This document shows, one piece after another, positions 1 through 53,313 of a DNA stretch of 64,000 nt. The translations under genes and the position numbers were made by a program. The stretch's first letter is position 1. Every line of letters begins with the position of its first letter. The notes beneath the pieces were generated by a model. It was not told the DNA's origin. It made no database searches and was given only the letters and a program-made list of their open reading frames with translations. Origin of the DNA: Ylistrum balloti (Eukaryota); the NCBI RefSeq assembly GCF_031769215.1, contig NW_026782359.1, positions 62,001 through 126,000 on the forward strand, in the 5' to 3' direction.

Positions 1-2790
1 CCACCTTTTAGAGGCAAACATTGATACCTTGTCCCTGAATTGACAACCTTTCAGAGGGTAAACATTGATACCTTGTCCCTGAACTGACCACCTTTTAGAG
101 GCAAACATTGATACCTTGTCCCTGAACTGACAAACTTTTAGAGGGTAAACATTGATACCTTGTCCCTGAATTGACAACCTTTCAGAGGGTAAACATCGAT
201 ACCTTGTCCCTGAATTGACAACCTTTTAGAGGTAAACATTGATACCTTGTCCCTGAATTGACAACCTTTTAGAGGCAAACATTGATACCTTGTCCCTGAA
301 TTGACAACCTTTTAGAGGTAAACATTGATACCTTGTCCCTGAACTGACCACCTTTTAGAGGCAAACATTGATACCTTGTCCCTGAATTGACAACCTTTCA
401 GAGGGTAAACATTGATACCTTGTCCCTGAACTGACAACCTTTTAGAGGGTAAACATTGATACCTTGTCCCTGAACTGACCACCTTTTAGAGGATAAACAT
501 CGATACCTTGTCCCTGAACTGACCTTTTAAAGGGTAAACATCGATACCTTGTCCCTGAACTGACAACCTTTTAGAGGGTAAACATTGATACCTTGTCCCT
601 GAATTGACAACCTTTCAGAGGGTAAACATTGATACCTTGTCCCTGAACTGACCACCTTTTAGAGGGTAAACATTGATACCATGTCCCTGAACTGACAACC
701 TTTTAGAGGGTAAACATTGATACCATATCCCTGAACTGACAACATTTTAGAGGATAAACATCGATACCTTGTCCCTGAACTGACCACCTTTTAGAGGATA
801 AACATCGATACCTTGTCCCTGAACTGACAACCTTTTAGAGGTAAACATTGATACCTTGTCCCTGAATTGACAACCTTTTAGAGGCAAACATTGATACCTT
901 GTCCCTGAATTGACAACCTTTTAGAGGTAAACATTGATACCTTGTCCCTGAACTGACCACCTTTTAGAGGCAAACATTGATACCTTGTCCCTGAATTGAC
1001 AACCTTTCAGAGGGTAAACATTGATACCTTGTCCCTGAACTGACCACCTTTTAGAGGCAAACATTGACACCTTGTCCCTGAACTGACAAACTTTTAGAGG
1101 GTAAACATTGATACCTTGTCCCTGAATTGACAACCTTTCAGAGGGTAAACATTGATACCTTGTCCCTGAATTGACAACCTTTTAGAGGTAAACATTGATA
1201 CCTTGTCCCTGAATTGACAACCTTTTAGAGGCAAACATTGATACCTTGTCCCTGAATTGACAACCTTTTAGAGGTAAACATTGATACCTTGTCCCTGAAC
1301 TGACCACCTTTTAGAGGCAAACATTGATACCTTGTCCCTGAATTGACAACCTTTCAGAGGGTAAACATTGATACCTTGTCCCTGAACTGACAACCTTTTA
1401 GAGGGTAAACATTGATACCTTGTCCCTGAACTGACCACCTTTTAGAGGATAAACATCGATACCTTGTCCCTGAACTGACCTTTTAGAGGGTAAACATTGA
1501 TACCTTGTCCCTGAACTGACAACCTTTTAGAGGGTAAACATTGATACCTTGTCCCTGAATTGACAACCTTTCAGAGGGTAAACATTGATACCTTGTCCCT
1601 GAACTGACCACCTTTTAGAGGGTAAACATTGATACCATGTCCCTGAACTGACAACCTTTTAGAGGGTAAACATTGATACCATATCCCTGAACTGACAACA
1701 TTTTAGAGGATAAACATCGATACCTTGTCCCTGAACTGACCACCTTTTAGAGGATAAACATCGATACCTTGTCCCTGAACTGACAACCTTTTAGAGGTAA
1801 ACATTGATACCTTGTCCCTGAATTGACAACCTTTTAGAGGCAAACATTGATACCTTGTCCCTGAATTGACAACCTTTTAGAGGTAAACATTGATACCTTG
1901 TCCCTGAACTGACCACCTTTTAGAGGCAAACATTGATACCTTGTCCCTGAATTGACAACCTTTCAGAGGGTAAACATTGATACCTTGTCCCTGAACTGAC
2001 CACCTTTTAGAGGCAAACATTGATACCTTGTCCCTGAACTGACAAACTTTTAGAGGGTAAACATTGATACCTTGTCCCTGAATTGACAACCTTTCAGAGG
2101 GTAAACATTGATACCTTGTCCCTGAATTGACAACCTTTTAGAGGTAAACATTGATACCTTGTCCCTGAATTGACAACCTTTTAGAGGCAAACATTGATAC
2201 CTTGTCCCTGAATTGACAACCTTTTAGAGGTAAACATTGATACCTTGTCCCTGAACTGACCACCTTTTAGAGGCAAACATTGATACCTTGTCCCTGAATT
2301 GACAACCTTTCAGAGGGTAAACATTGATACCTTGTCCCTGAACTGACCACCTTTTAGAGGATAAACATTGATACCTTGTCCCTGAACTGACCTTTTAGAG
2401 GGTAAACATTGATACCTTGTCCCTGAACTGACAACCTTTTAGAGGGTAAACATTGATACCTTGTCCCTGAATTGACAACCTTTCAGAGGGTAAACATTGA
2501 TACCTTGTCCCTGAACTGACCACCTTTTAGAGGGTAAATATTGATACCATGTCCCTGAACTGACAACCTTTTAGAGGGTAAACATTGATACCATATCCCT
2601 GAACTGACAACATTTTAGAGGATAAACATCAATACCTTGTCCCTGAACTGACCACCTTTTAGAGGATAAACATCGATACCTTGTCCCTGAACTGACCACC
2701 TTTTAGAGGATAAACATTGATACCTTGTCCCTGAACTGACAAACTTTTAGAGGATAAACATTAATACCTTGTCCCCGACATGACCTGCTT
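1..2790. repeat. Satellite A: 43-44 bp tandem array, organised as a 956-bp 22-mer higher-order repeat (~2.9 copies); extends past the window start
   Basis: Monomer GATACCTTGTCCCTGAA(C/T)TGAC(A/C)ACCTTTTAGAGG(G)TAAACATT. GATACC recurs at 23, 67, 110, 154 ... 936, 979. The sequence at position 1 recurs at 957 and 1913. The rare variant GATACCATATCC occurs at 719, 1675 and 2587. Confidence 0.97.
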
Positions 2791-2799
2791 TTGAAGGTA

Positions 2800-3830
2800 C
2801 ACATCGATACTCAGACTTGTCTTACATTAGAATATACACATAGTTACCATGACTCTGACCTGACCTACATTAGAAGGTACAAATTGATACCATGACTCTT
2901 ACCTGACCTACATTAGAAGGTACACATTGATACCTTCACTCTGACTTGACCTACATTAGAAGGTACACATTGATACCATGACTCTGATCTGACCTACATT
3001 AGAAGGTACAAATTGATACCATGACTCTGACCTGACCTACATTAGAAGGTACAAATTGATACCATGACTCTGACCTGACCTACATTAGAAGGTACACATT
3101 GATACATTGACTCTGACCTGACCTACATTAGAAGGTACAAATTGATACCATGACTCTTACCTGACCTACATTAGAAGGTACACATTGATACCTTCACTCT
3201 GACTTGACCTACATTAGAAGGTACACATTGATACCTTCACTCTGACTTGACCTACATTAGAAGGTACACATTGATACATTGACTCTGACCTGACCTACAT
3301 TAGAAGGTACACATTGATACCTTAACTCTGACTTGACCTACATTAGAAGGTACACATTGATACCTTCACTCTGACTTGACCTACATTAGAAGGTACACAT
3401 TGATACATTGACTCTGACCTGACCTACATTAGAAGGTACACATTGATACCATGACTCTGACCTGACCTACATTAGAAGGTACACATTGATACCTTCACTC
3501 TGACTTGACCTACATTAGAAGGTACACATTGATACATTGACTCTGACCTGACCTACATTAGAAGGTACACATTGATACCATGACTCTGACCTGACCTACA
3601 TTAGAAGGTACACATTGATACCTTCACTCTGACTTGACCTACATTAGAAGGTACACATTGATACATTGACTCTGACCTGACCTACATTAGAAGGTACACA
3701 TTGATACCATGACTCTTACCTGACCTACATTAGAAGGTACACATTGATACCTTCACTCTGACTTGACCTACATTAGAAGGCACATATTGACACACTGCCC
3801 CTGACTTGTCTTACATTAGAAGGCACATAT
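2800..3830. repeat. Satellite B: 43-bp tandem array (~24 copies) related to satellite A
   Basis: Monomer GATACCATGACTCTGACCTGACCTACATTAGAAGGTACACATT; a hand alignment to satellite A gives 31/43 identities. Three variants (CATTGAC, CCATGAC, CCTTCAC) cycle with a 129-bp period over ~3400-3780. Confidence 0.95.
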
Positions 3831-7545: not shown

Positions 7546-9764
7546 GGACACTTCAACACCAACACTCTTCATAAAGTAAAGAAAAAATGGGATTTGCATA
7601 GTCAAATATATAATATATAAATATATAAGAGTATACAGTATGTATACACATGCATAGAGATAAGGATAAATATATTTGTACTCTTGTAGTAGAACTGGAC
7701 TGGGCTAGCCTACTGAAAAGGAAATTGTTGCAAGCTTAGAAGGAATTGTTGATTAAACAAGCACAAATCTAGAGAAAGTTAAGAGAAAAATGTTGTATCT
7801 TTACATCAATGTATGATCAATAACTATTGCGATATTGTAAACTATATAAAACATTACCTGAATACTAACCATTGCAGGGGTTGCTAGTATTTGATGTTTT
7901 TATATAGGAAGAAATTCTAACGATAAGTCTATGACTAAGACAAGAAAAAATCATGGATATTTATTCAGAACCCTTTGGACTACATCATGTGCAAACATGT
8001 CAGGTGTATATACAGAGTGGACACTGTATATACACTATATCACTACCTTTATAAACTTGTAGAAATGTTATAATTTGTCTCTATGCTTGTTTGGTTTACT
8101 TAATTGACACATAGATTTTAGTTTGAATTCTTCAACTATCAAAACAATCAGTCTTTGATTTTCTGTGTTTATGAAACTCTGTGATGTAAATAGGATGTCT
8201 AGATCTGCTCTGCATTAAAAATATATACAACAACATGGAGATATTGAGTGGAAAATCTTGACAACATAAAAGCAACATTTCGACATTCAGGATAAATATA
8301 TATGTATACATTATTGTATTCTTTATTCTATTTTTTTTCTTTTTTAACAGGTGGACGCAATTTTATGTATCATCACATAGTCAACTCTAATAGATAGTAT
8401 TGCATTATCAATGTGTACTAGAATTTCATAGGAGACCAAGAACACGTAAAATTGTGAACTGAATATTCTGCGAAGAAAATGGAACATGCAGCCCCGCCCC
8501 CGCAGTCTAAGCTTATCCCAGAAAACTATACCAGATGTACAACATATATTTCGCCCATGCTATGTGACCTTGCGCATTGTTACCTTGTGGTGACAGTGTG
8601 GTATTTATGGAGTTCCGTCAGTATCCTTCGTGATGGTTATTACTAGCCTATTGCGATCACGACAAATCATCTACATTTATGATAAAGCGAAACGTGATTC
8701 CTTGGTCTAGTCATGCTTTCATTTTATTGTTGACACTTTTACCACATAAAAGAGTTCGGTCAGGGGCATGTAAGCCTGTTTTCGCAAACAGTATTGATTA
8801 TCTCCCTTTGGTCGTATTTTCCAAGGTAGCAATACACAGTTTCTGAGTGTGAATGTACGTGGGTGGTATTTTTAATTTATTATTTTACCCTATTATAACG
8901 TTGTTTTTTAAATGACAACAAATAAATCCTTGCTAAATTTGCAATGTCATTTTGAAGCGGACAACTTGGGGCTTCAGAATAATATTTTAGCATGGTGTTA
9001 GAGATTACCATTTGAGCAGTCTCCCTCCTGTGTTTACGCAGCAAAAACTAGGTAGAGAAAATTCCCTTTATTATTGTCAGCACGTGTTCATGCTGTGAAG
9101 CCGATCTGAGCTGCAGTTTGCTGAAACGTAAGAAGTTTGTTACCACGACATTGGTATTTATTTTCAAACAGGTGTTCAGAGCTAAATTCCTCCTATGAAG
9201 TTGTAGTTTTGGATTGAAATTTGTCGGGTTTTTCCCCGCATAAGCATTTGTAGAGTTGGTAACCGTGGCAATCAAAAGTGAAATGTAAAAAGGGATTTTT
9301 TTTGGTGGATACAATTTTACATTTCTCTACTGTTACCGTAATTTTCATGTAGTTTAGTACGAGCGAAAACGCACCTTTGTGAAAACAACGTTATATTCCG
9401 AAATTACTTTAAAACGTCGTCTGCTTTCAGCATTACAGTCGAGGTCATACATGTTTATAACGTAACAAGATGGATCCGCCAACATAATGGCCAAATCAAA
9501 CTACCAGCAAGAGAAAACATAGTCATTCTGCTCTCTGGATAGGAATGCGACCACACAAACTAATGCAACAGTGATCAGTGGATCCATACACACAGACAAA
9601 AGGTAGGAATCCTGCCTGAAACCGATGTACAAACCAACTTATGCCATTTGGCAACGGGATCAGCAATTACTCTGAGCAATGTCTTTTAGCCACCATCCAT
9701 GTAAAAGATCATCACAGAAATTTACAATTTGGAAAGGATATCGCTTGTATAAATCGATTCAAAG

Positions 9765-10177
9765 CTAGGTCTGAAACTCCCACAAAAACCTCCCAAACAG
9801 CAGTCACTACACATTCTTCTCCGAAGCGCCCTAGGTCTGAAACTCCCACAAAAACCTCCCAAACAGCAGTCACTCCACATTCTACTCCGAAGCGCCCTAG
9901 GTCTGAAACTCCCACTAAAACCCCCCAAACAGCAGTCACTCCACATTCTACTCCGAAGCGCCCTAGGTCTGAAACTCACACAAAAACCTCCCAAACAGCA
10001 GTCACTCCACATTCTACTCCGAAGCGCCCTAGGTCTGAAACTCCCACAAAAACCTCCCAAACAGCAGTCACTCCACATTCTACTCCGAAGCGCCCTAGGT
10101 CTGAAACTCACACAAAAACCTCCCGAACAGCAGTCACTCCACATTCTACTCCGAAGCGCCCTAGGTCTGAAACTCCC
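9765..10177 (+). repeat. 66-bp minisatellite (~6.2 copies) encoding a 22-aa unit RPRSETPTKTSQTAVTPHSTPK
   Basis: CTAGGTCTGAAACTC recurs at 9765, 9831, 9897, 9963, 10029, 10095 and 10161, all in frame in ORF 9641-10255. Confidence 0.97.
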
Positions 10178-10950
10178 GAATCGACTTCAAAACATGACGG
10201 GACTTCGCCTGCTTTATCCATCGACTCTTTTTCATCCCACGGCTGGGCCAGCTAAAGCATAATTGGGAACCTAGAGTATACAATTCGATAAGATATAGAC
10301 ACAATTAACGCGAAAACGCCAAGTTGATGAATTTTCACATACAAAACATTGTGAAAACCACTGATATCTTATGTATTTTCCTACTCCATCTGGACAACCT
10401 GTCTCCCAGCCATAACTTTCACGCGAAACTTGGGATGAGGGAAACCGCATCTCCCTTTTCAAATACCAAGATGAAATAGTGGAACGTACAATAAATGGAA
10501 CGTTAAATCAGCTTAATTTCCTGATGGGCGTGAGATAATAGTGATGCTGGAAATCAACTTCAACCTTGTAATCTGCATTGTAAACGTATAAATTCCCTAC
10601 CGTCTGGAAAGACTTTTAAAGAGGAATTCAATGCCGTGATCTATGAACTGGAGGAGTGTCTGGACAAATACACGTTTTCACTTGCAGTCTTAATCAGTGG
10701 TGATTTCAATGCCTCAGTGTATAGAAACCCTGCAAATGATAGAGCTCAACATTCTCAAAGAATTCGATGATCTCGTACTTCATGTCCACGCCTAACTGGA
10801 ACGGGGCAACTGTAATCAGTAGTATCGAAATGGTATCCGCGACAATCTAAAAACTACAAACATTATACCAGATATCAACCCAAACCACGAAAGGAAAAAA
10901 CCTAAAAGACTGAGATCAAAACGAAAACGTAAAATTAAAAGAATAAAACA

Positions 10951-11250
10951 GAAATAAGTAAAACAAGGTAGCGTGTGCTAGTAAGATAGAAATAAGTAAA
11001 ACAAGGTAGCGTGTGCTAGTAAGATAGAAATAAGTAAAACAAGGTAGCGTGTGCTAGTAAGATAGAAATAAGTAAAACAAGGTAGCTTGTGCTAGTAAGA
11101 TAGAAATAAGTAAAACAAGGTAGCGTGTGCTAGTAAGATAGAAATAAGTAAAACAAGGTAGCGTGTGCTAGTAAGATAGAAATAAGTAAAACAAGGTAGC
11201 GTGTGCTAGTAAGATAGAAATAAGTAAAACAAGGTAGCGTGTGCTAGTAA
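10951..11250. repeat. 38-bp minisatellite (~7.9 near-identical copies) inside the LINE remnant
   Basis: Unit GAAATAAGTAAAACAAGGTAGCGTGTGCTAGTAAGATA, starting at 10951 and 10989 and continuing. Confidence 0.97.
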
Positions 11251-17589: not shown

Positions 17590-18726
17590 CTATCTAGTCA
17601 TGTTTTCACTGTTGCTCGAGTTCTGGCTGTAACTTATGGCGCGGATACTTTGACGTATAGAGCTCCCTGTCCCACTTGTCGACACCGCGTTTTTGCACGC
17701 GAAACACTTGAAGATGGCGCGCCGTATTTTATCGTTAATGACACCATAAAGAAAAGGATTGACACATGCGTTTGCAAGGGCGATACAAACTGTAATAATG
17801 AGAGCAATTGAAGGAACCTGCATATTATCCATCATGCCATCGATGAGAATTATGACGAAAACAACGAAGATTGGGAGCCACATCAACATGAACAGGAACA
17901 CAAGCAGTAGTAATGTTTTTATCAATTTCACGTCTCGTTGATCACGATTTTTTCGGGTCTTCAGGGAATTTGAATTTAGTACGTCGACTCTGTTGTGATT
18001 ATGTAAAATAGCACGTCGTGACCCCACAAATTTGCGAATAATTTTGAAATAGTTCATACTCATGACAGCAATTGGAATGACAAAACCAAGCAAACAACTA
18101 AGAACAGTGAAGAAGATAGATGCACGGAACCCACTTGTCTTTGGCCACGACAAAGTACATATAGTGACGTAATCATGTCCGAACAGAAACGATCTGGTGT
18201 GAAAATACAACGCAAGTGGAATAAAGCACAACAAGCAGACGACCCACGTGATTATGATAATGGCGACTGCCACTTGTGGGGTCATCTTCTTGGAAGTTGT
18301 TTTATTAATACATATATGTCGGTCAATACTAATCACAGTCATAGTCCAGATCATGACCATGGCACAAGTAAACAGAAGGTAAACAAATACTTTGCACACA
18401 GCATTACCAAAAATCCAATCACCTGTTAAACGCGTGATTGCAATGAAAGGACTTCCGAATGAAAACAAAATGTCTGCCATTGCCAAATTGGCTATCATGC
18501 AGTTGGTAACGGTTCGAGTGCTCTTTGTTTGGAACATCTGGTAAAAGATCAGGATATTACCGAACATGGAAAATAGAAATAGGACAATGAATACCAATGC
18601 CTCTATGTAAGGTAGTCCCGACCATGGACGGTTGAATTCCGACATGAACGTGAAAAAGGAAGAGTTCCCAAAACCGTACTCGTGAATGCCGTAGAACCAG
18701 GACTTGTTGAAGTATGAGTCCCCCAT
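17590..18726 (-). CDS. FFAR4: Class A GPCR, free fatty acid receptor 4 (GPR120)-like; intronless CDS, 378 aa
   Basis: Seven hydrophobic segments with GN (TM1), NLAMAD (TM2), IDRH (TM3), MWLP (TM6) and NPFLY (TM7). FFAR4-like motifs include FFTFMSEF, ITRLTGDW, CTLSWP and DVKLIKTLLLLV. The track start at 18753 is a GTG directly after a TGA; the first in-frame ATG is 18726, in ACCATGG context. Confidence 0.9.
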   Translation of the reverse strand: MGDSYFNKSWFYGIHEYGFGNSSFFTFMSEFNRPWSGLPYIEALVFIVLFLFSMFGNILIFYQMFQTKSTRTVTNCMIANLAMADILFSFGSPFIAITRLTGDWIFGNAVCKVFVYLLFTCAMVMIWTMTVISIDRHICINKTTSKKMTPQVAVAIIIITWVVCLLCFIPLALYFHTRSFLFGHDYVTICTLSWPKTSGFRASIFFTVLSCLLGFVIPIAVMSMNYFKIIRKFVGSRRAILHNHNRVDVLNSNSLKTRKNRDQRDVKLIKTLLLLVFLFMLMWLPIFVVFVIILIDGMMDNMQVPSIALIITVCIALANACVNPFLYGVINDKIRRAIFKCFACKNAVSTSGTGSSIRQSIRAISYSQNSSNSENMTR

Positions 18727-19599
18727 GGTGATATCATCAGCGTCCTCATTCACTCATTGTTCATGATCTGGAGATATAAATTATTGATTAATAACATTTA
18801 AAATTAGCATTGAAGCAATCGATAACATGCAAATATATACATTAACATTACATTTTCAACATTACATTGCCTGTTACTATGGTGACGTTCACGTGGAACA
18901 TGATAGTTATATATTATAGCAGGTAAAGGCAATTTGTCGAACTTCATTGAAACATAGGGCAAGTGCACGGCTATATTTAGGTCCTTAGCATTACTGACAA
19001 GTACTCAAAGGACAAATTAGCTTTAATGTTGAATTCATTATTTGGCTCTACTGTATCGAATTATTAGTTTTATTGAAAAGTGCAATTCACTTAATACTTT
19101 TTAATGATATCATTTCCTTGTATCAGCTATGTAAACAGAAAACTAAAACATACAGAAGTATATTGTCAATACTCATCAGCAAAGCTATTTATGACTTCTA
19201 CGTAAGGTAGACGGAACGTTTGTCAACTTAGAATACAAAATTGCAAAAAAAGATATGATATTTGTATTGTTAATCATTAACAGATTCTGAAAGTTAATGA
19301 AATTAACCACGTGTTTAAAAGGAAACATACTGAAGGAACGTAAATCTTCAAATTCCCAACTTCCATTTATAGACAAAGGATTTTTTATCAAACTATTTTG
19401 ATTAAGACTTTTGTTTAACCAATATGTATGTATCTGCTGTTTGACCGGTTCCTTAAAACACAGGAAGAAGTATTGGAAACTTGTTCATTGTGTCTAATGA
19501 AAGGATTAGACGTGAAAACATTTCTTGCTGTACTTGGTCCCTCCTCTTACATTAACGTCATTAACCATAAACAATCACAAAAGGTATAAAATGATAATG

Positions 19600-40000: not shown

Positions 40001-41887
40001 CAATAGTTCATGGCAATACTGCTACTCATGAACGTGACACTTTCATGACATGATAATGTTTTGATTGTGAGAGACAATAATAACATAGGTAACACTAAAA
40101 ATTCTTTACTTCATTGTTACAATGATTACGTCACACATTGTTTACATACATATATACATCAACACCGGGGTATGACAGTGGTACTAGAGTGCTATTGTCC
40201 ACATGTTCTCTTGCGTTCAGAATTAATATCCTTACATTTAAGGAGTGATGACGGCTGTTAACTTATGCACGTCTAATTATAGGTGTGAAATGGTCGAAAA
40301 AGGGAAATTAAGTGGTAAGTTGTTTTAAGGCTTCCTGCTGCACTCATTGCCCTATATCTCTGTAAAGGTTTGGCTTAAATACTTGTATTTGCGGTTTACC
40401 AAAATATCATTAAGTCTTGAAAAAGGCTTGATTTCTTCAAAAATCTAGTACTTGACCAAAAATATATTCAGAAAAAGCTTTGCATGATGTCACTGTGTTA
40501 TAAATTACCAGGAAAGAAACATTCTGACGACATATGCCAGGTTTTATTATCCCATTCTAGGACGCAGATATAACAATGTCATCTTATATATGATCATAAA
40601 GTATTTATAAAAAAAATATCTTGCAATGCTATATCTATATACTCGAAGGGTCACTAGCTCCTTACATTTCGGTGACAATGTAACTTCGTCCAACACATAT
40701 AAAACAAACGCAGCTTCGAGGAGATGGTGTCTAATAGACTATATACAACATATACAATTTCAGTTAGTTCCCAGTTTTGGTCATAAATAATGAATTTTGA
40801 ATTGAATTAAACTGAACTTACAAAACACCCCAAATAAAACTTGTCATGTTGATTAATAGAAATACAATACATGACGATCTGAAACTATTGAGGAAACATA
40901 TATGAGAAAATTAGTTAGATCTTTATATCTTGATATGATATTTGCTTTAGTTGGTGAGTATGCTATTCCTCGCGCCATACACAGTCAATGGGTTACGTAA
41001 TGATATGGACAGGTCATATAACCTAGTGTCATGGTTGGTAATACTGCACACAAAATACAATACTAGTTTCATATGAATTGTGAAAATATATTGTTGATAT
41101 ATAGATCACAGCATGTTTGCTTAAAATATTCAACGAGTAAATATTGCAATATTTGCAAAAATATATCTTAATTTGCATTAGAACCACAACTTTACATACT
41201 GTACATACTGTTTCACATTCACGTCATCTTTTATCACAGAAATATCAATAAAACACACTCACACAAAAGCAATACACATGACAACTCATCATACTAACTA
41301 ATGGATTTCAATGGTAACCTCTCGTGCTGACGTCTCGTGGCTAGGTGTGGGTGTTTTTACCCGCCACAGCCTCCACACGGATGCCATTGGTGTGTACTCC
41401 ACGTGGATGATTCACACTAAATATCAGCTCTATATCTGATGTAAGTAATGCTGTTGGGTTCTATGTTGGAAATAAGTTCCATACAATACAGCTGACATAC
41501 ACAAAATATGAAAGACATTTGGTATTATAAGCTGTGTACCTTATGTTTTTCACTATTATGGACCCTCCGATTATTGTTAGTAGTGTCGGTCACTGTTAAC
41601 ATCACACATGTATGTCGGCCGGCTTATCACGGACAAATGTGTTTCTACACCTGAGTGTTATAATCAACATAAACACTTCTCTAGTTAGTCAAATAATATT
41701 CAACATCTATTATACTAATTCTCACAAAGTCTGCCAATCCCAATCACGACTCATTTTATGAAACAGATGCAACATTATGGCATCAAGTAAGAATGATTCC
41801 TGAAGATATCAGTAACGATGCGTAGTTATTGGACCTCTCAAAACTTCTAATGGAGTTGAATATTTTGTTTTGTCCCTTGTGTCAGGA

Positions 41888-42016
41888 TCAGTCTAGTAAA
41901 CTCCCTAGTTTACATTGGTGTATTCTGGCATGGTATCCGGCATAGTCTAACTTGCATGTGATTACATTGTTATCGTAATTGAGTTCTGCTATCAGTAAAG
42001 AAGGATTTACCTCGAT
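41888..42016 (-). CDS. LOXL2: Lysyl oxidase-like, last coding exon (IEVNPSLLIAELNYDNNVITCKLDY...GSLLD*)
   Basis: Acceptor TTTTTATTTCAG; 129 nt ending in TGA at 41888. Contains the LOX C-terminal motif VNP...E..Y.NN...C. The symbol denotes the LOXL2/3/4 family. Confidence 0.92.
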   Translation of the reverse strand: MEVNPSLLIAELNYDNNVITCKLDYAGYHARIHQCKLGSLLD

Positions 42017-42738: not shown

Positions 42739-42833
42739 CTTAAATACATATTCCCCAGTCTTCAGATCCGTTATATCTATCCACTGGCAGTCTATATCCG
42801 CCATGTAGTTATCAGAACAACCGACAGAAATAC
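42739..42833 (-). CDS. LOXL2: Lysyl oxidase-like exon with the LTQ tyrosine ([32 protein letters not shown])
   Basis: AG and GT boundaries, phase 1/0; contains [11 protein letters not shown]. Confidence 0.95.
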
Positions 42834-43355: not shown

Positions 43356-43513
43356 CCTGCTGGCCGTAGTTTTGACACCTGTACTTTGGTCGAACCCCAC
43401 GACCACATTCGGAGTCTTCGAGACAAAAGCTGGCCTTCAGACCCTCGGCCATAAGGTTACCGTTATGGTCCGTGATATCGTAGTGGGCGAATACCTCCAT
43501 ACTATGGTAGTGC
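43356..43513 (-). CDS. LOXL2: Lysyl oxidase-like exon with HYHSMEVFAHYD and the LTQ lysine (AEGLKASFCLEDS)
   Basis: Acceptor TTTTTGACAG and donor G|GTAATG; phase 2/1. Confidence 0.95.
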
Positions 43514-44674: not shown

Positions 44675-44792
44675 TGATGACATGCGTGCCATTCCCATTC
44701 ATGGCGTCTCTTGGTCGGATTGAAGTCAGCCGTTCCGCGATTGCTTACAACACTGGAAAATCTCAAGAGTCGTCTCGAACTTCTTCGCCATC
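44675..44792 (-). CDS. LOXL2: Lysyl oxidase-like exon ([18 protein letters not shown]...WEWHACHQ)
   Basis: Acceptor TTTGATAG and donor CA|GTAAGT; encodes the first half of the copper talon. Confidence 0.95.
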
Positions 44793-45004: not shown

Positions 45005-45148
45005 CATACGGATTATTTCTTTGTAAAGCGTAAGCGGAGGAAGATAAACACTGTTCCTCCATTGCGCATGTCAAATAAAAAAGTGCTCTATCCTGCAGGA
45101 ATGCAGTAGTCTCCAACATATATGTACTCGGCTCAAGATCAGGTAATT
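45005..45148 (-). CDS. LOXL2: Lysyl oxidase-like exon, start of the catalytic domain (ELPDL...CAMEEQCLSSSAY)
   Basis: Contains the LPDL and CAxEExCLSSSA motifs; acceptor TATTGTAG and donor G|GTAGGT. Confidence 0.95.
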
Positions 45149-46601: not shown

Positions 46602-46761
46602 CTTTTGCGCACACGATCCCTGCTACAGAGTCGGCCCTCCTACACCTCATGCCTCCTCCCTCATGTTCCATCCACTGGCATTCATTCAAGTTCTCCTCCT
46701 TTCCTGTGCATCTCACAGAGTAGAAATATTTATTCAAATTTCTTCCTCCGAACACAGAAGT
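46602..46761 (-). CDS. LOXL2: Lysyl oxidase-like exon, C-terminal half of the last SRCR domain
   Basis: Reads VRCTGKEENLNECQ...CRRADSVAGIVC; acceptor TTTTAATCAG and donor G|GTGAGC. Confidence 0.92.
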
Positions 46762-49614: not shown

Positions 49615-49785
49615 TGTTGTGTTTTGTTGTGCGAATCCTATCCCGAGATGTTTACACGTAACAATAGCTTCCTTAAATGTCCATTGGTCACCACAAATGA
49701 CCCCGTACTCTGTCTGTCCATTGGGTAACACCTCCAGTCTTCCATCTGTTCCTCGTCGTCCTCCAGCTAAACGCACCAGGATTTT
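49615..49785 (-). CDS. LOXL2: Lysyl oxidase-like exon, N-terminal half of the last SRCR domain
   Basis: Reads VRLAGGRRGTDGRLEV...YGVICGDQWTFKEAIVTCKHLG; acceptor GATTGTAG and donor ACA|GTAAGT. Confidence 0.93.
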
Positions 49786-51655
49786 CTACAATCAAATTTT
49801 TAGTAGTAATGAAAAAGACGAAATGAGAAAAATACTCTTATTTTATTATAAGAGTCCTTTATCAGGCTATCCTTCTTGCGAATCGTCCTCTTGGTACATT
49901 TTTAAATGTATCAAAGGGCAACCTAATTATTCAAGCAACACTTATAAGATCGATACAAATGCTTCCGACAAAAATATTAAGGATGTAAATGAAAGTTATC
50001 CAGGTTTCTCATATCAAATGATCTGTTGATATTCAAGATTTGACATAAGATGTTTGTAATATATACTTTTGGTTATATGTCTATGAATCAAATGGTTATC
50101 GCGAGATCGCTCCACATTTTAACAGCTGCCAGTGACAACCACGAAAACACAGAAAACGTAAAGGACCATTTCACGTATCTAGTGAAATATAAGAAAGCAT
50201 ATTCCTATATCAGATGCCAGTGATAGGACTGGTTTATTATGTGCAAAATAAACATTCATCCGTGCGCCCCACGTCCATTTGAAGCCATTCGTCCGGATAA
50301 AAAACTGAGGCGTCAGATTGAGATATATATGTGGTCTTAATGGTTTGCTTGAGTGCATAATGAAATTATGAGTAATGTTAGTGTTAAATAACAAACTTAC
50401 AAAGATATCCAGCGAGTGTAACGAAAATGGAGGTAAGATGTTCCCACAGTAATTGTCAAATATGTGCACAAACTGCAATTGAGTCTTGTAAAAAGGAGAA
50501 ATTAACGAGTGAGATAGCCTAAATATAGTTATGTTCTAAATAAAAACAACGCTATTGTCAATCATTTCGGTGTATGAATTTCACCATCTAAACACAAAAG
50601 GTAAAAAGTAATTCAGGGTCAAAACCCCTCTTCTCGTAACAAGATATCATATATCTACACAAAAGATGGATGGCGTAGGGACGGTGAGGTAGGACGCTAT
50701 AAGTCTAACCACGGTCACCGCGATCTTATCATGTATCCAGTAAACAATGGGCAGTAAGAGGAGAGTCCAGCACCTGATACTGGGCTTCAGACAACTCATT
50801 TGATAACATTATATCTAACGACAACACAGCCATAATCTCACCAATAACAGACTCTTATTACAAACTGTAGACGGCTTGAAAGCGATAGCGTTTTAATTGT
50901 TGAAAGAAGTTTGATTCAATTATATTTGTCTTAAATAATATGACATTTGTCCGCAATGGTTTAGTGCGATCCTTGTCAACATGCATGCTTTTGTTGTGGT
51001 CACATGATACGGGCTGCCTCTGCTGAATCTGCTGTTAGTGGATATCTGTAGCATGATTAGTATATACATGTACTAGTGGTCAGAGTACTCATAATCGTTC
51101 CCACAAAAGCACCGTCATATAAAATTAATATTCCCTATATAAACGAGTGTGGGTGGTCAAACGTGAGCATTGTGTGTGTCTTAAATCGTGTATTCACATC
51201 ATGTAATACCCAGACGAACTCTTAATCTCAACTATATCTATACTCACAATATATTCATATAATTAGTCACAGCTCTACCACGGAGTCTGAAGGTTCATAG
51301 CGTTCTCAAATAACATTCAAGCAATGATATTCTCAAAACATTTCGCATTGTTTATTTTTGAAGATTCGCTTTTGATCAGATTTTATGTAGTTAATGTGCC
51401 TAGATAACACATAGCATTGCCTAAAATAAGATAATGTTGTCTGTTGCTACAGATAGCAAAGCACTAGATTCTTAATTGGAAAAGGTATAACTTGGTATTT
51501 ACAAACAAATCAAACGACAACCACAAAATTATAGTTTTATAGCTTTTTGCTATTACGTGCATTCACAATTACTATCTTTCAGTTGAAGTACTTTGTAGCC
51601 TATCCACAGAAGGACAATTTGCTAGTCGTTAACACTACAGCACATATATACTCAC

Positions 51656-53313
51656 GTTTGCAGGAGTTCTGTGCCTGCCGTGGTGATGCCTGTGTCTATG
51701 GCCACTACTTCCGTTCCTATACCGTTCCATACCATTAGGGTATATCCGGTTGTCGTCCGTCAAATTGTTTCTTGAGTCTTGTCTTTGTGATTCGCTAACT
51801 CGTTGGCGTGTCGCACCTCCATACCCCGTATTTGAATTTGATTCCACGCTGTTGATACCATTGAAGCTAGGAGCTTGTGTAACTGCGGTATCTGCCTTCA
51901 TTTCATCTTCCCTTGATGGTGTTGATGTCGTTGTAGTTGTTGTCGTGGTTGTTGTGGTGGAAGGAGCTGGTATCGCCTCGCCAAATACTGCTTTGCGCAT
52001 TGCAATATATTGAGCTAAAGTTTTCCGTTCTGCTCTTGTTCCTGGTTTAGCTACCAAGATTTTGCCGTTACTAAGCTTCAACACCCATCGCTTTAGGACC
52101 CTGTCCATGGTCCATCTATTGACCGTAAGATTCGGTCTCGTTGCCTCTTCCCTAGATGCTAAATTGTCAATAGCAGCTCGTCGTGTTGTCGGTCTAGGTA
52201 ATGCTGAAGTCGGCTTAGGTGTTGTTGTTGGTTTAGGCGTCGTGGTTGTTGTCGGCCTTGGGGTCGTTGTTGTTGCTGTTGTTGGCTTAGGTGTAGGAGG
52301 TTTTGGTGTTGCGTCATGGATTACAGGCACGATGGAATTATCAAGAACATTGCTGATCACAGTATCGATGGAATTAGCATTCGTGTTTTCAATAGAATTG
52401 CTGACAGCTTGCACTTGAATCTCGTTGTTGTCAGCCGCTGGGGTAGGTGCAATAGGCCTTGGCGTTGCTGTCACTGGTTTAGGTGTTGTCGGAGGCGGGC
52501 TAGGTTTGACTGTAATTGGTTCTGGTGTAGTCGGTTTTGGTGTTGTGGTAGTTGTAGTTGTTGGTTTTGGTGTTGTGGTAGTTGTAGTCGTTGGTTTTGG
52601 TGTTGTGGTTGTTGTAGTTGTTGGTTTTGGTGTTGTGGTTGTTGTAGTTGTTGGTTTTGGTGTTGTGGTAGTTGTAGTCGTTGGTTTTGGTGTTGTGGTA
52701 GTTGTAGTTGTTGGTTTTGGTGTTGTGGTTGTTGTGGTTGTTGGTTGCGGTGTAGTGGTAGTAGTTGTAGTTGTTGGTTTTGATGTTGTGGTAGTTGTGG
52801 TTGTTGGTTTTGGTGTTGTGGTTGGCTTTGGTGTTGTAGTTGTTAGTTGCGGTGTAGTGGTAGTAGTTGGTGTGGTGGTAGTTGGTCTAGCAGTTGGAGC
52901 GTGAGTAGCGGATATGATAATCCTATCGTGGGAAATCTCGTTATCAATCCCATGCACAATATGATGATTCTGATCCCTATCGGAAATTGAAGAACCAGGA
53001 TTGATATCAGGGAGAATGACGTAGCCAGTATCCCGGCCGTCCATGAGTGCAGCAGGACCAGTATCGACGGCGCTTCGGGATGGCTTCGGAGTGGTGGTTG
53101 TGGTTGTAAGCCTAGTAGTGGTTGGTTTTGGAGTTGTTACCTTTGTAGTGGTAGAGGTAGTCGTGGTAATATGGTCTCGACATTTTACTCCAGCAGACGT
53201 GTATCGGCCCGCGCAGAACCTGTGCCTTGTACCCCGTCCATACCCAGGATACCTACACTGCGTAAGGTGGATCTCGTTTCCCCGACAGTGCATATACGAC
53301 ATCCACTTAAAAC
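51656..53313 (-). CDS. LOXL2: Lysyl oxidase-like giant exon: C-terminal half of an SRCR domain plus a ~500-aa Thr/Pro-rich mucin-like linker
   Basis: Acceptor CTCTGTTTCAG and donor AAC|GTGAGT; a 1658-nt open frame in phase with the next exon. It begins WMSYMHCRGNEIHLTQC...CAGRYTSAGVKC (SRCR). Confidence 0.88.
52533..52800 (-). repeat. Coding 30-bp tandem repeat (PKPTTTTTTT decamers)
   Basis: GGTTTTGG recurs every 30 bp from 52533 to 52713, with PQP and SKP variants at ~52743 and ~52776. Confidence 0.95.

What the first reader, a model, noticed from the sequence alone, without database searches (positions are those of the whole stretch)
51656..53200. Lysyl oxidase with a ~500-aa mucin/lubricin-like Thr-Pro-Lys insert between SRCR domains
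Seen: one 1658-nt exon encodes half an SRCR domain, then ~500 aa dominated by Thr and Pro with near-perfect PKPTTTTTTT decamers. It splices in frame to a second SRCR and an intact LOX catalytic domain. Established: vertebrate LOXL2/3/4 have four SRCRs with short linkers and no PTS mucin block. Inference: this may be an O-glycosylated bottle-brush spacer that projects the enzyme. Its regularly spaced lysines could also make the protein its own cross-linking substrate, suiting a structural-enzyme hybrid for byssus, periostracum, shell matrix or mucus. This is the best candidate for an undescribed system in the window.
Basis: partly seen in the sequence, partly recalled or inferred. Interest (0 to 1): 0.75.

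Follow-up and report, generated by a model that had tools for sequence, protein, structure and literature searches.

The report
Scallop lysyl oxidase with mucin-like linker
This is the single lysyl oxidase (collagen cross-linking enzyme) gene of a scallop, and its long threonine/proline-rich "mucin" stretch is real; the same kind of linker sits at the same place in the lysyl oxidases of other molluscs, so it is a lineage-wide feature and not a one-off invention.

Summary
On the minus strand, a 1658-nt exon (53313..51656) has AG/GT borders. It encodes the C-terminal half of an SRCR domain plus a 507-aa linker (30% Thr, 13% Pro; 9.6 copies of a 30-bp unit = TTTTTTTPKP). It joins in frame to SRCR2 and an intact lysyl oxidase domain. 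The full model has 9 exons and 964 aa; exon 1 lies 3.4 kb beyond the window. It is the only LOX locus found in this 648-Mb pectinid genome.

No RNA run of this species was available. Spliced transcript contigs of Argopecten run from the decamer array through exons 2-9 and match my exon borders.

The claim of an undescribed system is only partly supported. The Argopecten irradians ortholog has the same architecture. Every mollusc ortholog examined has a Thr-rich SRCR1-SRCR2 linker, 69 to 545 aa long; one is auto-named "mucin-2-like". Arthropod orthologs have about 45 aa. No paper found describes this.

The linker is a mosaic: four PTS blocks separated by conserved islands. One island is a roughly 50-aa folded mini-domain found only in scallop, oyster and mussel LOXLs. 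A His/Arg-rich motif precedes SRCR2.

Lysine is not conserved in the repeats, which argues against the self-substrate idea. The most likely role is an O-glycosylated spacer, possibly cleaved off.

The parts
51656..53313 (-). Exon 2 (1658 nt): SRCR1 C-terminal half plus the whole 507-aa inter-SRCR linker
   Evidence: AG/GT borders, phases fit. 76-78% identical to the Argopecten and Pecten orthologs. An Argopecten transcript contig aligns to 52675-51668.
53177..53313 (-). C-terminal half of SRCR domain 1
   Evidence: Pfam SRCR positions 63-99, E 0.006 for the half domain. The N-half is in exon 1 outside the window (L006 3630..3369).
53066..53176 (-). PTS block 1 (37 aa)
   Evidence: At least 70% Thr/Ser/Pro in 20-aa windows.
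52916..53065 (-). Non-PTS island A (DTGPAALMDGRDTGYVILPDINPGSS...)
   Evidence: Conserved between the window and Argopecten.
52439..52915 (-). PTS block 2 (about 159 aa), holding the TTTTTTTPKP decamer array (30-bp unit x 9.6 at 52533-52822)
   Evidence: Short-read contigs of a second individual break inside the array.
52319..52438 (-). Non-PTS island B (...SIDTVISNVLDNSIVPV...)
   Evidence: NVLDNSI-PV is invariant in the three scallops.
52181..52318 (-). PTS block 3 (46 aa)
   Evidence: conserved PKPTSALPRPTTRRAA end.
51965..52150 (-). Conserved mini-domain of about 50-60 aa (W..D.....WV...G..LVAKPG.R....Y...R)
   Evidence: Alignment A2: 6 invariant columns in 15 copies. AlphaFold pLDDT 78, four strands plus a helix. 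Only bivalve LOXL linker pieces match it among 1.84 billion representatives.
51896..51985 (-). PTS block 4 with a run of 11 Thr
   Evidence: the Thr run is invariant in the three scallops.
51884..51913 (-). REDEMKADTA motif, counterpart of (E/D)RMK(A/S)DDP in mussels and oysters
   Evidence: The resemblance to BMP1/tolloid cleavage sites is an inference.
51668..51703 (-). His/Arg-rich motif GHRHRHHHGRHR just before SRCR2
   Evidence: RHRHHHG-HR is invariant in scallops. Similar motifs occur in mussels and oysters.
49615..49785 (-). Exon 3: SRCR2 N-terminal half
   Evidence: Pfam SRCR E 3.4e-8; AG/GT, phase 0/0; transcript block 49776-49619.
46602..46761 (-). Exon 4: SRCR2 C-terminal half
   Evidence: Pfam SRCR E 2e-4.
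45005..45148 (-). Exon 5: start of the lysyl oxidase domain
   Evidence: PF01186 positions 1-44.
44675..44792 (-). Exon 6: LOX domain, first part of the copper-binding WHxCHxHYH motif
   Evidence: PF01186 positions 46-85; aligns to human LOXL2 5ZE3 residues 276-309.
43356..43513 (-). Exon 7: LOX domain with HYHS and the LTQ lysine (AEGLKASFCLED)
   Evidence: PF01186 E 1e-18; aligns to 5ZE3 residues 311-362.
42739..42833 (-). Exon 8: LOX domain with the LTQ tyrosine ([14 protein letters not shown])
   Evidence: PF01186; aligns to 5ZE3 residues 364-393.
41888..42016 (-). Exon 9: end of the LOX domain and the stop codon
   Evidence: PF01186 positions 163-204.
41487..41627 (-). Conserved block in the 3' untranslated region
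   Evidence: 76% identity to the Argopecten transcript contig L008 2421-2564.

Best explanation
What it is. The window holds exons 2-9 of the only lysyl oxidase gene found in a pectinid scallop genome. The predicted product is a secreted copper/LTQ amine oxidase of the LOXL2/3/4 type, ordered signal peptide - SRCR1 - 507-aa linker - SRCR2 - LOX domain (964 aa).

The linker. The large exon encodes the linker, which is a mosaic. Four Thr/Pro-rich mucin-like blocks are present, one enlarged by a recent 30-bp tandem expansion. They alternate with conserved islands: a small folded beta/alpha mini-domain restricted to scallops, oysters and mussels, an EMKAD motif, and a His/Arg-rich motif next to SRCR2.

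Distribution. A Thr-rich linker at this position is shared by the mollusc orthologs and varies in length through repeat gain and loss. In Mytilus the annotated isoforms also differ by one linker cassette.

Inferred mechanism. The Thr/Pro blocks are O-glycosylated in the secretory pathway and form a stiff, hydrated, protease-resistant stalk. The stalk separates the SRCR2-LOX catalytic unit from SRCR1 and the mini-domain, which act as binding or localising modules. Because this is the only LOX gene found, the enzyme is most likely the animal's general cross-linker of collagen-type matrix and not a tissue-specific structural protein. The conserved motifs may allow proteolytic release of SRCR2-LOX.

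Shown: gene structure, domain content, catalytic motifs, orthology, distribution of the linker, and its inclusion in mRNA of relatives.

Inferred: glycosylation, spacer role, substrates, processing.
For: - Gene model: 9 exons, all GT-AG, phases fit.
- Domains: Pfam SRCR and Lysyl_oxidase on the exons.
- Catalytic motifs align to human LOXL2 5ZE3.
- Only one LOX locus was found in the 648-Mb assembly.
- Orthologs with the same architecture: Argopecten irradians 903/918 aa and a partial Pecten maximus model.
- Spliced transcript contigs from three runs extend open-frame from the decamers through to the stop codon and are colinear with my exons.
- Full-length ORFs of 946-959 aa sit on 3.2-4.8-kb contigs of relatives, too short to hold introns.
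- Linker table: 26 mollusc orthologs, T 11-28%, length 69-545 aa; three arthropod orthologs 44-48 aa.
- The tree of the SRCR2-LOX part follows the species tree: molluscs 99/96, scallops+oysters+mussels 100/98.
- Mini-domain: A2, pLDDT 78, restricted distribution.
- The exon stays open in a second individual.
- Published background: LOXL2/3/4 is the only LOX type in protostomes (PMC4448552).
Against: - No RNA of this species could be examined; the only run found holds DNA.
- The transcript contigs of Argopecten stop inside the repeat array. The 5' third of the exon is therefore supported only by annotated models and by full-length contigs of more distant bivalves.
- O-glycosylation, secretion and enzyme activity are untested.
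- The count of one LOX gene is a lower bound by the tool's own statement.
- Half of the 12 polymorphisms in the exon change the residue, so much of the linker is only loosely constrained.
Confidence: 0.72

Rival explanations
1. Pro-region model. The SRCR1-mucin-mini-domain part is a targeting or latency region that is cut off outside the cell. A tolloid/BMP1-like protease would cut at the MKA|D motif, or a basic-residue protease near the His/Arg-rich motif, releasing active SRCR2-LOX. This would parallel BMP1 processing of vertebrate pro-LOX and the removal of SRCR1-2 from LOXL2. It is compatible with the best explanation and adds a step to it.
For: - (E/D)RMK(A/S)DDP is conserved after the mini-domain in mussels, oysters and other bivalve fragments, within otherwise variable sequence.
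- BMP1/tolloid-related enzymes cut DSP-PP so that the new N-terminus starts DDPN (PMC3398931).
- BMP1 is cited as activating LOX.
- From my own knowledge: pro-LOX is cut at G|DDPY.
- RAER|K inside the mini-domain is invariant in scallops.
- Argopecten has RRRGSR just before SRCR2.
Against: - In this window the motif is EMKADTA: the Asp is kept but DDP is lost.
- The window has no R-x-[KR]-R site.
- No cleavage data exist for any mollusc LOXL.
- Short-motif resemblance is weak evidence.
Confidence: 0.25
2. Neutral expansion. The Thr/Pro blocks are tolerated low-complexity sequence that grows and shrinks by replication slippage and unequal crossing-over in a disordered linker. Beyond keeping two domains apart, they have no function of their own.
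For: - Linker length ranges from 69 to 545 aa among orthologs, and repeat units differ between lineages (TTTTTTTPKP, TTTTTTTTTKP, TQPTSAT).
- DNA copies are 90% alike, so the expansion is recent.
- Argopecten isoforms or alleles differ by 15 aa inside the array.
- 6 of 12 polymorphisms are non-synonymous.
Against: - Thr enrichment of the linker is kept in every mollusc ortholog examined, across bivalves, gastropods, a chiton and an octopus.
- The linker stays long in all bivalve orthologs measured.
- The blocks are interleaved with strongly conserved islands.
Confidence: 0.2
3. First reader's model. The protein is a structural-enzyme hybrid for byssus, periostracum, shell matrix or mucus, and the regularly spaced PKP lysines are oxidised by the protein's own catalytic domain so that it cross-links itself into the material.
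For: - 17 of the 26 linker lysines lie in [PS]KP context at regular spacing.
- From my own knowledge: KP-type cross-linking domains exist in tropoelastin.
- Lysyl oxidases are reported at a barnacle adhesive interface (reference cited in PMC9168380).
Against: - The lysine is not conserved: PRP alternates with PKP in Argopecten, and the Physella repeats (TQPTSAT) have no Lys.
- Long linkers occur in the oyster, freshwater-mussel and snail orthologs as well as in the scallop and mussel ones.
- This is the only LOX gene found, so it must serve general matrix cross-linking.
- The scallop byssus secretome paper has no SRCR or mucin term in its text, and lysyl oxidase appears only in a reference title.
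- Inference: dense O-glycans would shield the lysines.
Confidence: 0.07
4. Gene-model artefact. The Thr/Pro stretch is intronic or is removed by internal splice sites, so the mature protein has a short linker.
For: - No RNA of this species was available.
- Mytilus isoforms skip a 204-aa linker cassette.
- The Pecten maximus model starts inside the exon.
Against: - Argopecten transcript contigs from three runs read open-frame from the decamer array to the stop codon.
- Annotated Argopecten isoforms X1 and X2 both keep the array.
- Bivalve contigs of 3.2-4.8 kb carry complete 946-959-aa ORFs.
- A 552-codon open frame is kept in two individuals, with no indels.
- The Mytilus short isoforms still retain the first PTS block.
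Confidence: 0.03

Closest known systems
Vertebrate LOXL2/LOXL3/LOXL4 (structure of human LOXL2, PDB 5ZE3)
   Same: Same catalytic domain, with WHxCHxHYH copper site and LTQ Lys and Tyr in place. SRCR domains lie N-terminal to it. Same superfamily, the only LOX type in protostomes (PMC4448552).
   Different: Two SRCR domains instead of four. A 507-aa Thr/Pro-rich mosaic linker lies between them, where the vertebrate proteins have closely spaced SRCRs. It also has a lineage-specific mini-domain and a His/Arg-rich motif.
Predicted mollusc LOXL orthologs in public databases, e.g. Argopecten irradians XP_069140617/8 ('uncharacterized protein'), Magallana gigas K1PQV8, Mytilus trossulus XP_063431972, Physella acuta 'mucin-2-like'
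   Same: Same order SRCR1 - Thr-rich linker - SRCR2 - LOX. Argopecten has the same decamers and the same islands. They are orthologous by tree.
   Different: Repeat number and unit differ. Oysters and mussels have two copies of the mini-domain, scallops one. Gastropods and non-pteriomorph bivalves lack it at the sensitivity used. None of these records has been studied experimentally as far as I could find.
Mucin-like O-glycosylated linkers and stalks of other secreted enzymes and proteins (lubricin/PRG4 KEPAPTT repeats, bile-salt-stimulated lipase C-terminal repeats, Thr/Pro linkers of fungal cellulases); named from my own knowledge
   Same: Tandem Thr/Pro-rich units with interspersed basic residues between or beside folded domains. 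Expected extended, glycosylated, protease-resistant spacer.
   Different: No sequence homology. None of the flanking domains of those proteins appears on the big exon: Pfam gives only SRCR there. Here the spacer sits inside a lysyl oxidase and is interrupted by conserved folded or motif islands.
Propeptide of vertebrate LOX and proline-rich region of LOXL1
   Same: A non-catalytic, largely disordered N-terminal region precedes the catalytic domain. In LOX it is removed by BMP1/tolloid proteases (cited). A motif resembling such sites occurs in bivalve linkers.
   Different: A different LOX subfamily that has no SRCR. There is no sequence similarity, and cleavage is unproven here.

Membership tests
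Lysyl oxidase family, LOXL2/3/4 type | Lysyl_oxidase catalytic domain (Pfam PF01186), complete | tested here: met
   Five exons cover profile positions 1-204, each above the cut-off. They are colinear with the orthologs.
Lysyl oxidase family, LOXL2/3/4 type | Copper-binding histidines (WHxCHxHYH) | tested here: met
   WEWHACH | Q | HYHS spans exons 6 and 7 and aligns to WIWHDCH / HYHS of human LOXL2 5ZE3.
Lysyl oxidase family, LOXL2/3/4 type | Lys and Tyr precursors of the lysyl tyrosylquinone cofactor | tested here: met
   AEGLKASFCLED aligns to AEGHKASFCLED. [14 protein letters not shown] aligns to GCWDMYRHDIDCQW. That these aligned residues are the LTQ residues is from my knowledge of LOXL2.
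Lysyl oxidase family, LOXL2/3/4 type | N-terminal SRCR domains | tested here: met
   There are two SRCR domains, each split over two exons. Vertebrate members have four.
Lysyl oxidase family, LOXL2/3/4 type | Orthology to bilaterian LOXL2/3/4 by phylogeny | tested here: met
   The tree of the SRCR2-LOX part follows the species tree. The scallop orthologs P0001 and P0002 stood in for the window, because the joined model was not built.
Lysyl oxidase family, LOXL2/3/4 type | Secretion signal and amine oxidase activity | not testable with these tools
   Exon 1 begins MGYSVLLAVCMYGMLFGVSRG, hydrophobic as a signal peptide would be. This is by inspection only; there is no activity assay.
Mucin-like (PTS) domain | Extended blocks rich in Pro, Thr and Ser, arranged as tandem repeats | tested here: met
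   Four blocks have at least 70% T/S/P; the largest is about 159 aa. There is a 30-bp unit x 9.6 copies.
Mucin-like (PTS) domain | Dense O-glycosylation | not testable with these tools
   No predictor or data were available. This is inferred from composition only.
Gel-forming mucins / lubricin | Flanking VWD-C8-TIL and cystine-knot domains (mucins) or somatomedin B and hemopexin domains (lubricin) | tested here: not met
   Pfam finds only SRCR on the big exon, and only SRCR-type families (SRCR, SRCR_2, weak Hepsin-SRCR) plus Lysyl_oxidase on the full-length orthologs. The name 'mucin-2-like' on the Physella record reflects composition only.
BMP1/tolloid-activated pro-enzyme (as vertebrate pro-LOX) | Cleavage motif with Asp at P1' (x|DDP type) between pro-region and enzyme | tested here: inconclusive
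   RMK(A/S)DDP is conserved in mussels and oysters. The window has EMKADTA. There are no cleavage data.

The most novel reading that the evidence does not exclude
Mollusc lysyl oxidases carry a so far undescribed regulatory and targeting region. It is a glycosylated mucin stalk that holds the enzyme in mucus-coated or matrix surfaces. In scallops, oysters and mussels it also holds a lineage-specific folded mini-domain (a new binding module), a tolloid-type cleavage motif and a His-rich metal-binding motif beside SRCR2. Together these would control where and when the only LOX enzyme found in the genome is released and loaded with copper.
Probability: 0.2. Interest if true: 0.55.

Novelty: new variant of a known kind. 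Interest (0 to 1): 0.36.

Why it matters
Lysyl oxidases have been studied almost only in vertebrates, where the non-catalytic regions decide localisation, activation and substrate choice.

If the mollusc enzyme is built as SRCR - mucin stalk - mini-domain - SRCR - LOX, three things follow:
- It is a natural example of a matrix cross-linking enzyme fused to a mucin-type spacer.
- It offers a small lineage-specific domain to test for binding to collagen, chitin or other matrix.
- It offers a possible parallel to BMP1 activation of LOX outside vertebrates.

For genome annotation, it explains why these genes are auto-named "uncharacterized protein" or "mucin-2-like".

The locus itself is an ordinary ortholog, so the value lies in the family-wide pattern and not in this window.

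Tried and rejected
- RNA evidence for this species. Laying it showed contigs running straight through introns, so it holds DNA; it gave polymorphism data only.
- Third word-based protein search, with the 177-aa tail alone, meant to catch short transcript-derived ORFs: nothing.
- Earlier notes of the scan, by place and by words: nothing.
- Local motif and tblastn search for the SRCR1 N-half inside the window: absent. It lies 3.4 kb beyond the window end.
- Pfam family PF27926, listed in the precomputed domains of one mussel protein: not in the local library, and no such hit on rescanning.
- Fold comparison of the mini-domain. Foldseek against PDB gave nothing at E <= 0.001 (best 0.23). Atlas neighbours are unrelated bacterial proteins with TM 0.5-0.65 on a 62-residue model, which means little.
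- The one non-LOXL hit of the mini-domain profile with several stretches (P0132, repeats WAEDP.LGRWV) is a different repeat family and is taken as chance resemblance. P0134 is low-complexity.
- Literature searches for a description of the mollusc LOXL linker found none. The library lacks most subscription journals, so absence is not proof.
- No complex prediction was sent, because I make no binding claim.
- The spliced protein model was never joined or sent to any search tool. Every search was exon by exon by reference, or with database orthologs.
- The N stretches at 33972-35076 were left untouched.
Full report
**1. The observation**

On the minus strand an exon runs from 53313 to 51656 (1658 nt). 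It is preceded by ...tttcag and followed by gtgagt. Its 552 full codons have no stop.

The first 45 residues match the C-terminal part of Pfam SRCR, positions 63-99. The other 507 residues are 30% Thr, 13% Pro, 6% Ser and 5% Lys.

Tandem Repeats Finder reports a 30-bp unit in 9.6 copies at 52533-52822 with 90% matches. This encodes seven perfect TTTTTTTPKP units; the linker holds 16 PKP in all.

One correction is needed. The linker is not a uniform PTS block. About 270 aa lie in four Thr/Pro-rich blocks, at 53176-53066, 52915-52439, 52318-52181 and 51985-51896. Between them lie non-repetitive stretches.

**2. The gene**

Pfam finds SRCR halves at 49785-49615 and 46761-46602, and Lysyl_oxidase pieces on five further exons down to 41888.

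A word-based protein search with the non-repetitive tail of the big exon found two scallop proteins. One is Pecten maximus "lysyl oxidase homolog 3-like" (555 aa, 80% identical). The other is Argopecten irradians "uncharacterized protein isoform X2" (903 aa, 69% identical).

The Argopecten protein has a signal peptide, SRCR1, the same decamers, the same islands, SRCR2 and LOX. Aligning it to the DNA placed all exons. It also showed that exon 1 (signal peptide and SRCR1 N-half, 262 nt) lies outside the window. Exon 1 is at contig C502 129630..129369, that is 3.4 kb beyond the window's end, so intron 1 is about 14 kb.

All nine exons have AG/GT borders and fitting phases. The lengths add up to 2895 nt, or 964 codons plus stop. 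I checked phases and translated each exon separately. The joined protein was not built for, or sent to, any search tool.

The copper-site histidines and the Lys and Tyr of the LTQ cofactor are in place when the exons are aligned to human LOXL2, PDB 5ZE3.

A six-frame scan of the whole 648-Mb assembly with the LOX profile found only this locus. By the tool's own statement that count is a lower bound.

**3. Is the exon in the mRNA?**

No RNA run of this species was available. The only run found holds DNA, because its contigs run through introns 1, 2 and 3. It still helps in one way. In a second individual the covered parts of exon 2 differ by 12 substitutions, six synonymous and six not. There is no indel in the exon, while the introns carry indels and a 55-bp deletion.

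Evidence from relatives is good. The Argopecten cluster contains 451-aa proteins from Logan assemblies. The three contigs that carry them come from runs SRR19746223-5 and are 2.1-2.7 kb long. They are spliced transcripts.

The open frame continues upstream of the called start to the very end of each contig. It passes through the mini-domain, PTS block 3, island B and into the TTTTTTPKP/PRP array. The contigs end inside the repeat, as short-read assemblies do.

At DNA level the longest contig aligns to the window in blocks. These blocks reproduce my exons 2 to 9 and a block of the 3' UTR.

Both annotated Argopecten isoforms keep the array and differ only by 15 aa inside it. Several bivalve contigs of 3.2-4.8 kb carry complete ORFs of 946-959 aa, too long to leave room for introns.

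It remains formally open for the 5' third of the exon in this species.

**4. How widespread is the insert?**

A search with the SRCR2-LOX part of the Argopecten protein returned the family. I located SRCR1 and SRCR2 in 39 of these proteins and measured the stretch between them in 29.

| Group | Inter-SRCR linker |
|---|---|
| Arthropod orthologs (3) | 44-48 aa |
| Vertebrate LOXL3 (2, SRCRs located only) | four or five closely spaced SRCR matches |
| Mollusc orthologs (26) | 69-545 aa, 11-28% Thr |

Lengths in the mollusc orthologs (aa):

| Species | Length | Species | Length |
|---|---|---|---|
| Haliotis | 69 | Solemya | 423 |
| chiton (Liolophura) | 81 | Magallana gigas | 440 |
| Patella | 104 | Argopecten | 450 |
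| Octopus | 178 | Nucella | 481 |
| Lymnaea | 175 | Saccostrea | 505-536 |
| Arion | 200 | Physella | 509 |
| Mya | 284 | Potamilus | 541 |
| | | Mytilus trossulus | 545 |

Mytilus, Potamilus and Mya have TTTTTTTTTKP-type repeats. Physella has TQPTSAT repeats, and NCBI's pipeline named that protein "mucin-2-like".

A maximum-likelihood tree of the SRCR2-LOX part follows the species tree. Molluscs form one group (99/96), bivalves one (96/91), and scallops, oysters and mussels one (100/98). These are orthologs, and the Thr-rich linker is an old feature of the mollusc gene whose length changes by repeat turnover.

In Mytilus, annotated isoforms differ by a 204-aa cassette that holds one PTS block, one mini-domain and the His-rich motif. 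There the linker length may also be regulated by splicing.

The insert is common, but I found no paper that describes it. The evolutionary study of lysyl oxidases states only that the LOXL2/L3/L4 type is the sole LOX of protostomes and varies in SRCR number (PMC4448552). Other hits mention mollusc LOXL only as a differentially expressed gene, for example in clam infection nodules (PMC4769524).

**5. What else is in the linker**

Comparing the three scallops shows strongly conserved islands.

The clearest is a stretch of about 50-60 aa, with pattern W..D.....WV...G..LVAKPG.R....Y...R, at 52150-51965. A local profile found it once in scallops and twice in oysters and mussels. It did not find it in Solemya, Mya, Potamilus, gastropods or Octopus.

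With an alignment of 15 copies, AlphaFold predicts four short strands and a helix, with mean pLDDT 78 and 86-88 in the core. Neither Foldseek against the PDB nor the Atlas shape search gave a meaningful neighbour.

The profile of this alignment, scored against 1.84 billion representative proteins, found 13 proteins at E <= 0.001. All convincing ones are bivalve LOXL linkers or fragments of them. This is a small, apparently folded module restricted to the LOXL of pteriomorph bivalves.

Downstream of the module, mussels and oysters share (E/D)RMK(A/S)DDP. Scallops have EMKAD(T/A)A. BMP1/tolloid proteases cut dentin sialophosphoprotein so that the new N-terminus begins DDPN (PMC3398931). From my own knowledge, they cut pro-LOX before DDPY. 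The motif is therefore a candidate processing site; this is an inference from a short motif.

A His/Arg-rich motif (GHRHRHHHGRHR, 51703-51668) directly precedes SRCR2 in scallops. It has counterparts in mussels and oysters. Metal binding or a basic cleavage site are possibilities, both untested.

**6. Mechanism**

Shown:
- the gene is a complete and apparently functional LOXL;
- the linker is translated in relatives;
- its composition is conserved across molluscs;
- it contains conserved islands.

Inferred:
- the Thr/Pro blocks are O-glycosylated and form an extended, hydrated spacer between SRCR2-LOX and the N-terminal SRCR1 and mini-domain, which would act as binding or localising modules;
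- the region may be cut off.

Because only one LOX gene was found, a general role in cross-linking collagen-type matrix is more likely than a byssus- or shell-specific role.

The self-substrate idea is weakened in three ways:
- the repeat lysine is not conserved (PRP alternates with PKP in Argopecten, and Physella repeats have no Lys);
- long linkers occur in the oyster, freshwater-mussel and snail orthologs as well as in the scallop and mussel ones;
- the linker of this species itself tolerates amino-acid polymorphism.

**7. Comparison and novelty**

By every sequence feature tested, the protein is a member of the LOXL2/3/4 type. It is not a gel-forming mucin or a lubricin relative. Pfam finds only SRCR on the big exon, and only SRCR-type families (SRCR, SRCR_2, weak Hepsin-SRCR) plus Lysyl_oxidase on the full-length orthologs.

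Functionally the linker resembles the glycosylated Thr/Pro linkers of other secreted enzymes. That comparison rests on my own knowledge and was not tested.

The locus is an ordinary ortholog of records already in public databases. The architecture as a family-wide variant, together with the mini-domain, appears undescribed in the literature I could search. I rate it a new variant of a known kind, of moderate interest.

**8. Limits**

- No expression data exist for this species, and there are no biochemical data for any mollusc LOXL.
- The single-copy count is a lower bound.
- Other lophotrochozoan phyla were not surveyed, because only the best 120 of 1927 hits are listed.
- The N stretches at 33972-35076 were left as they are.

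Noticed in passing
window 51965-52150 (-); alignment A2: A 50-60-aa mini-domain inside the linker is predicted to fold (pLDDT 78). Among 1.84 billion representative proteins it matches only LOXL linkers of scallops, oysters and mussels. It has no Pfam family in the local library and no structural neighbour.
   Followed up: yes
P0007 vs P0124/P0009 (Mytilus): Annotated Mytilus isoforms differ by a 204-aa linker cassette (PTS block + second mini-domain + His-rich motif). Linker length may be regulated by alternative splicing in mussels. In scallops the equivalent sequence is fused into the single big exon.
   Followed up: partly
window 51884-51913 (-) and orthologs: The motif (E/D)RMK(A/S)DDP is conserved after the mini-domain in mussels and oysters (EMKADTA here). 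It resembles BMP1/tolloid cleavage sites.
   Followed up: partly
window 3-3753: Satellite with a 43-44-bp unit, about 87 copies at 91% matches, with a higher-order period of 304 bp. It runs to the window's start.
   Followed up: no
window 9765-10177 (ORF 9641-10255, +): A 66-bp tandem repeat, 6.3 copies at 96% matches, lies inside a 204-aa ORF that would encode 22-aa Pro/Thr/Ser-rich repeats (PRSETPTKTSQTAVTPHSTPKR). There is no Pfam match, so coding status is unknown.
   Followed up: partly
window 10950-11250: A 38-bp tandem repeat, 7.9 copies, 99% matches.
   Followed up: no
window 17590-18753 (-): An uninterrupted 387-aa ORF encodes a rhodopsin-family G-protein-coupled receptor (Pfam 7tm_1, E 1e-51). 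It looks like an intronless GPCR gene about 23 kb downstream of the LOXL gene on the same strand.
   Followed up: partly
window 33972-35076: Five N stretches (997 N in all) are embedded in sequence whose frames read as Thr, Leu or Tyr runs, so the surroundings are low-complexity.
   Followed up: no
window 49965-50021 and 49576, 49422, 53554 (introns): The second individual (run X1) differs by a 55-bp deletion in intron 2 and small indels in introns 1 and 3, but has no indel in exon 2.
   Followed up: yes
window 41487-41627 (-): A block of the 3' untranslated region is 76% identical to the Argopecten transcript, so part of the UTR is conserved.
   Followed up: no
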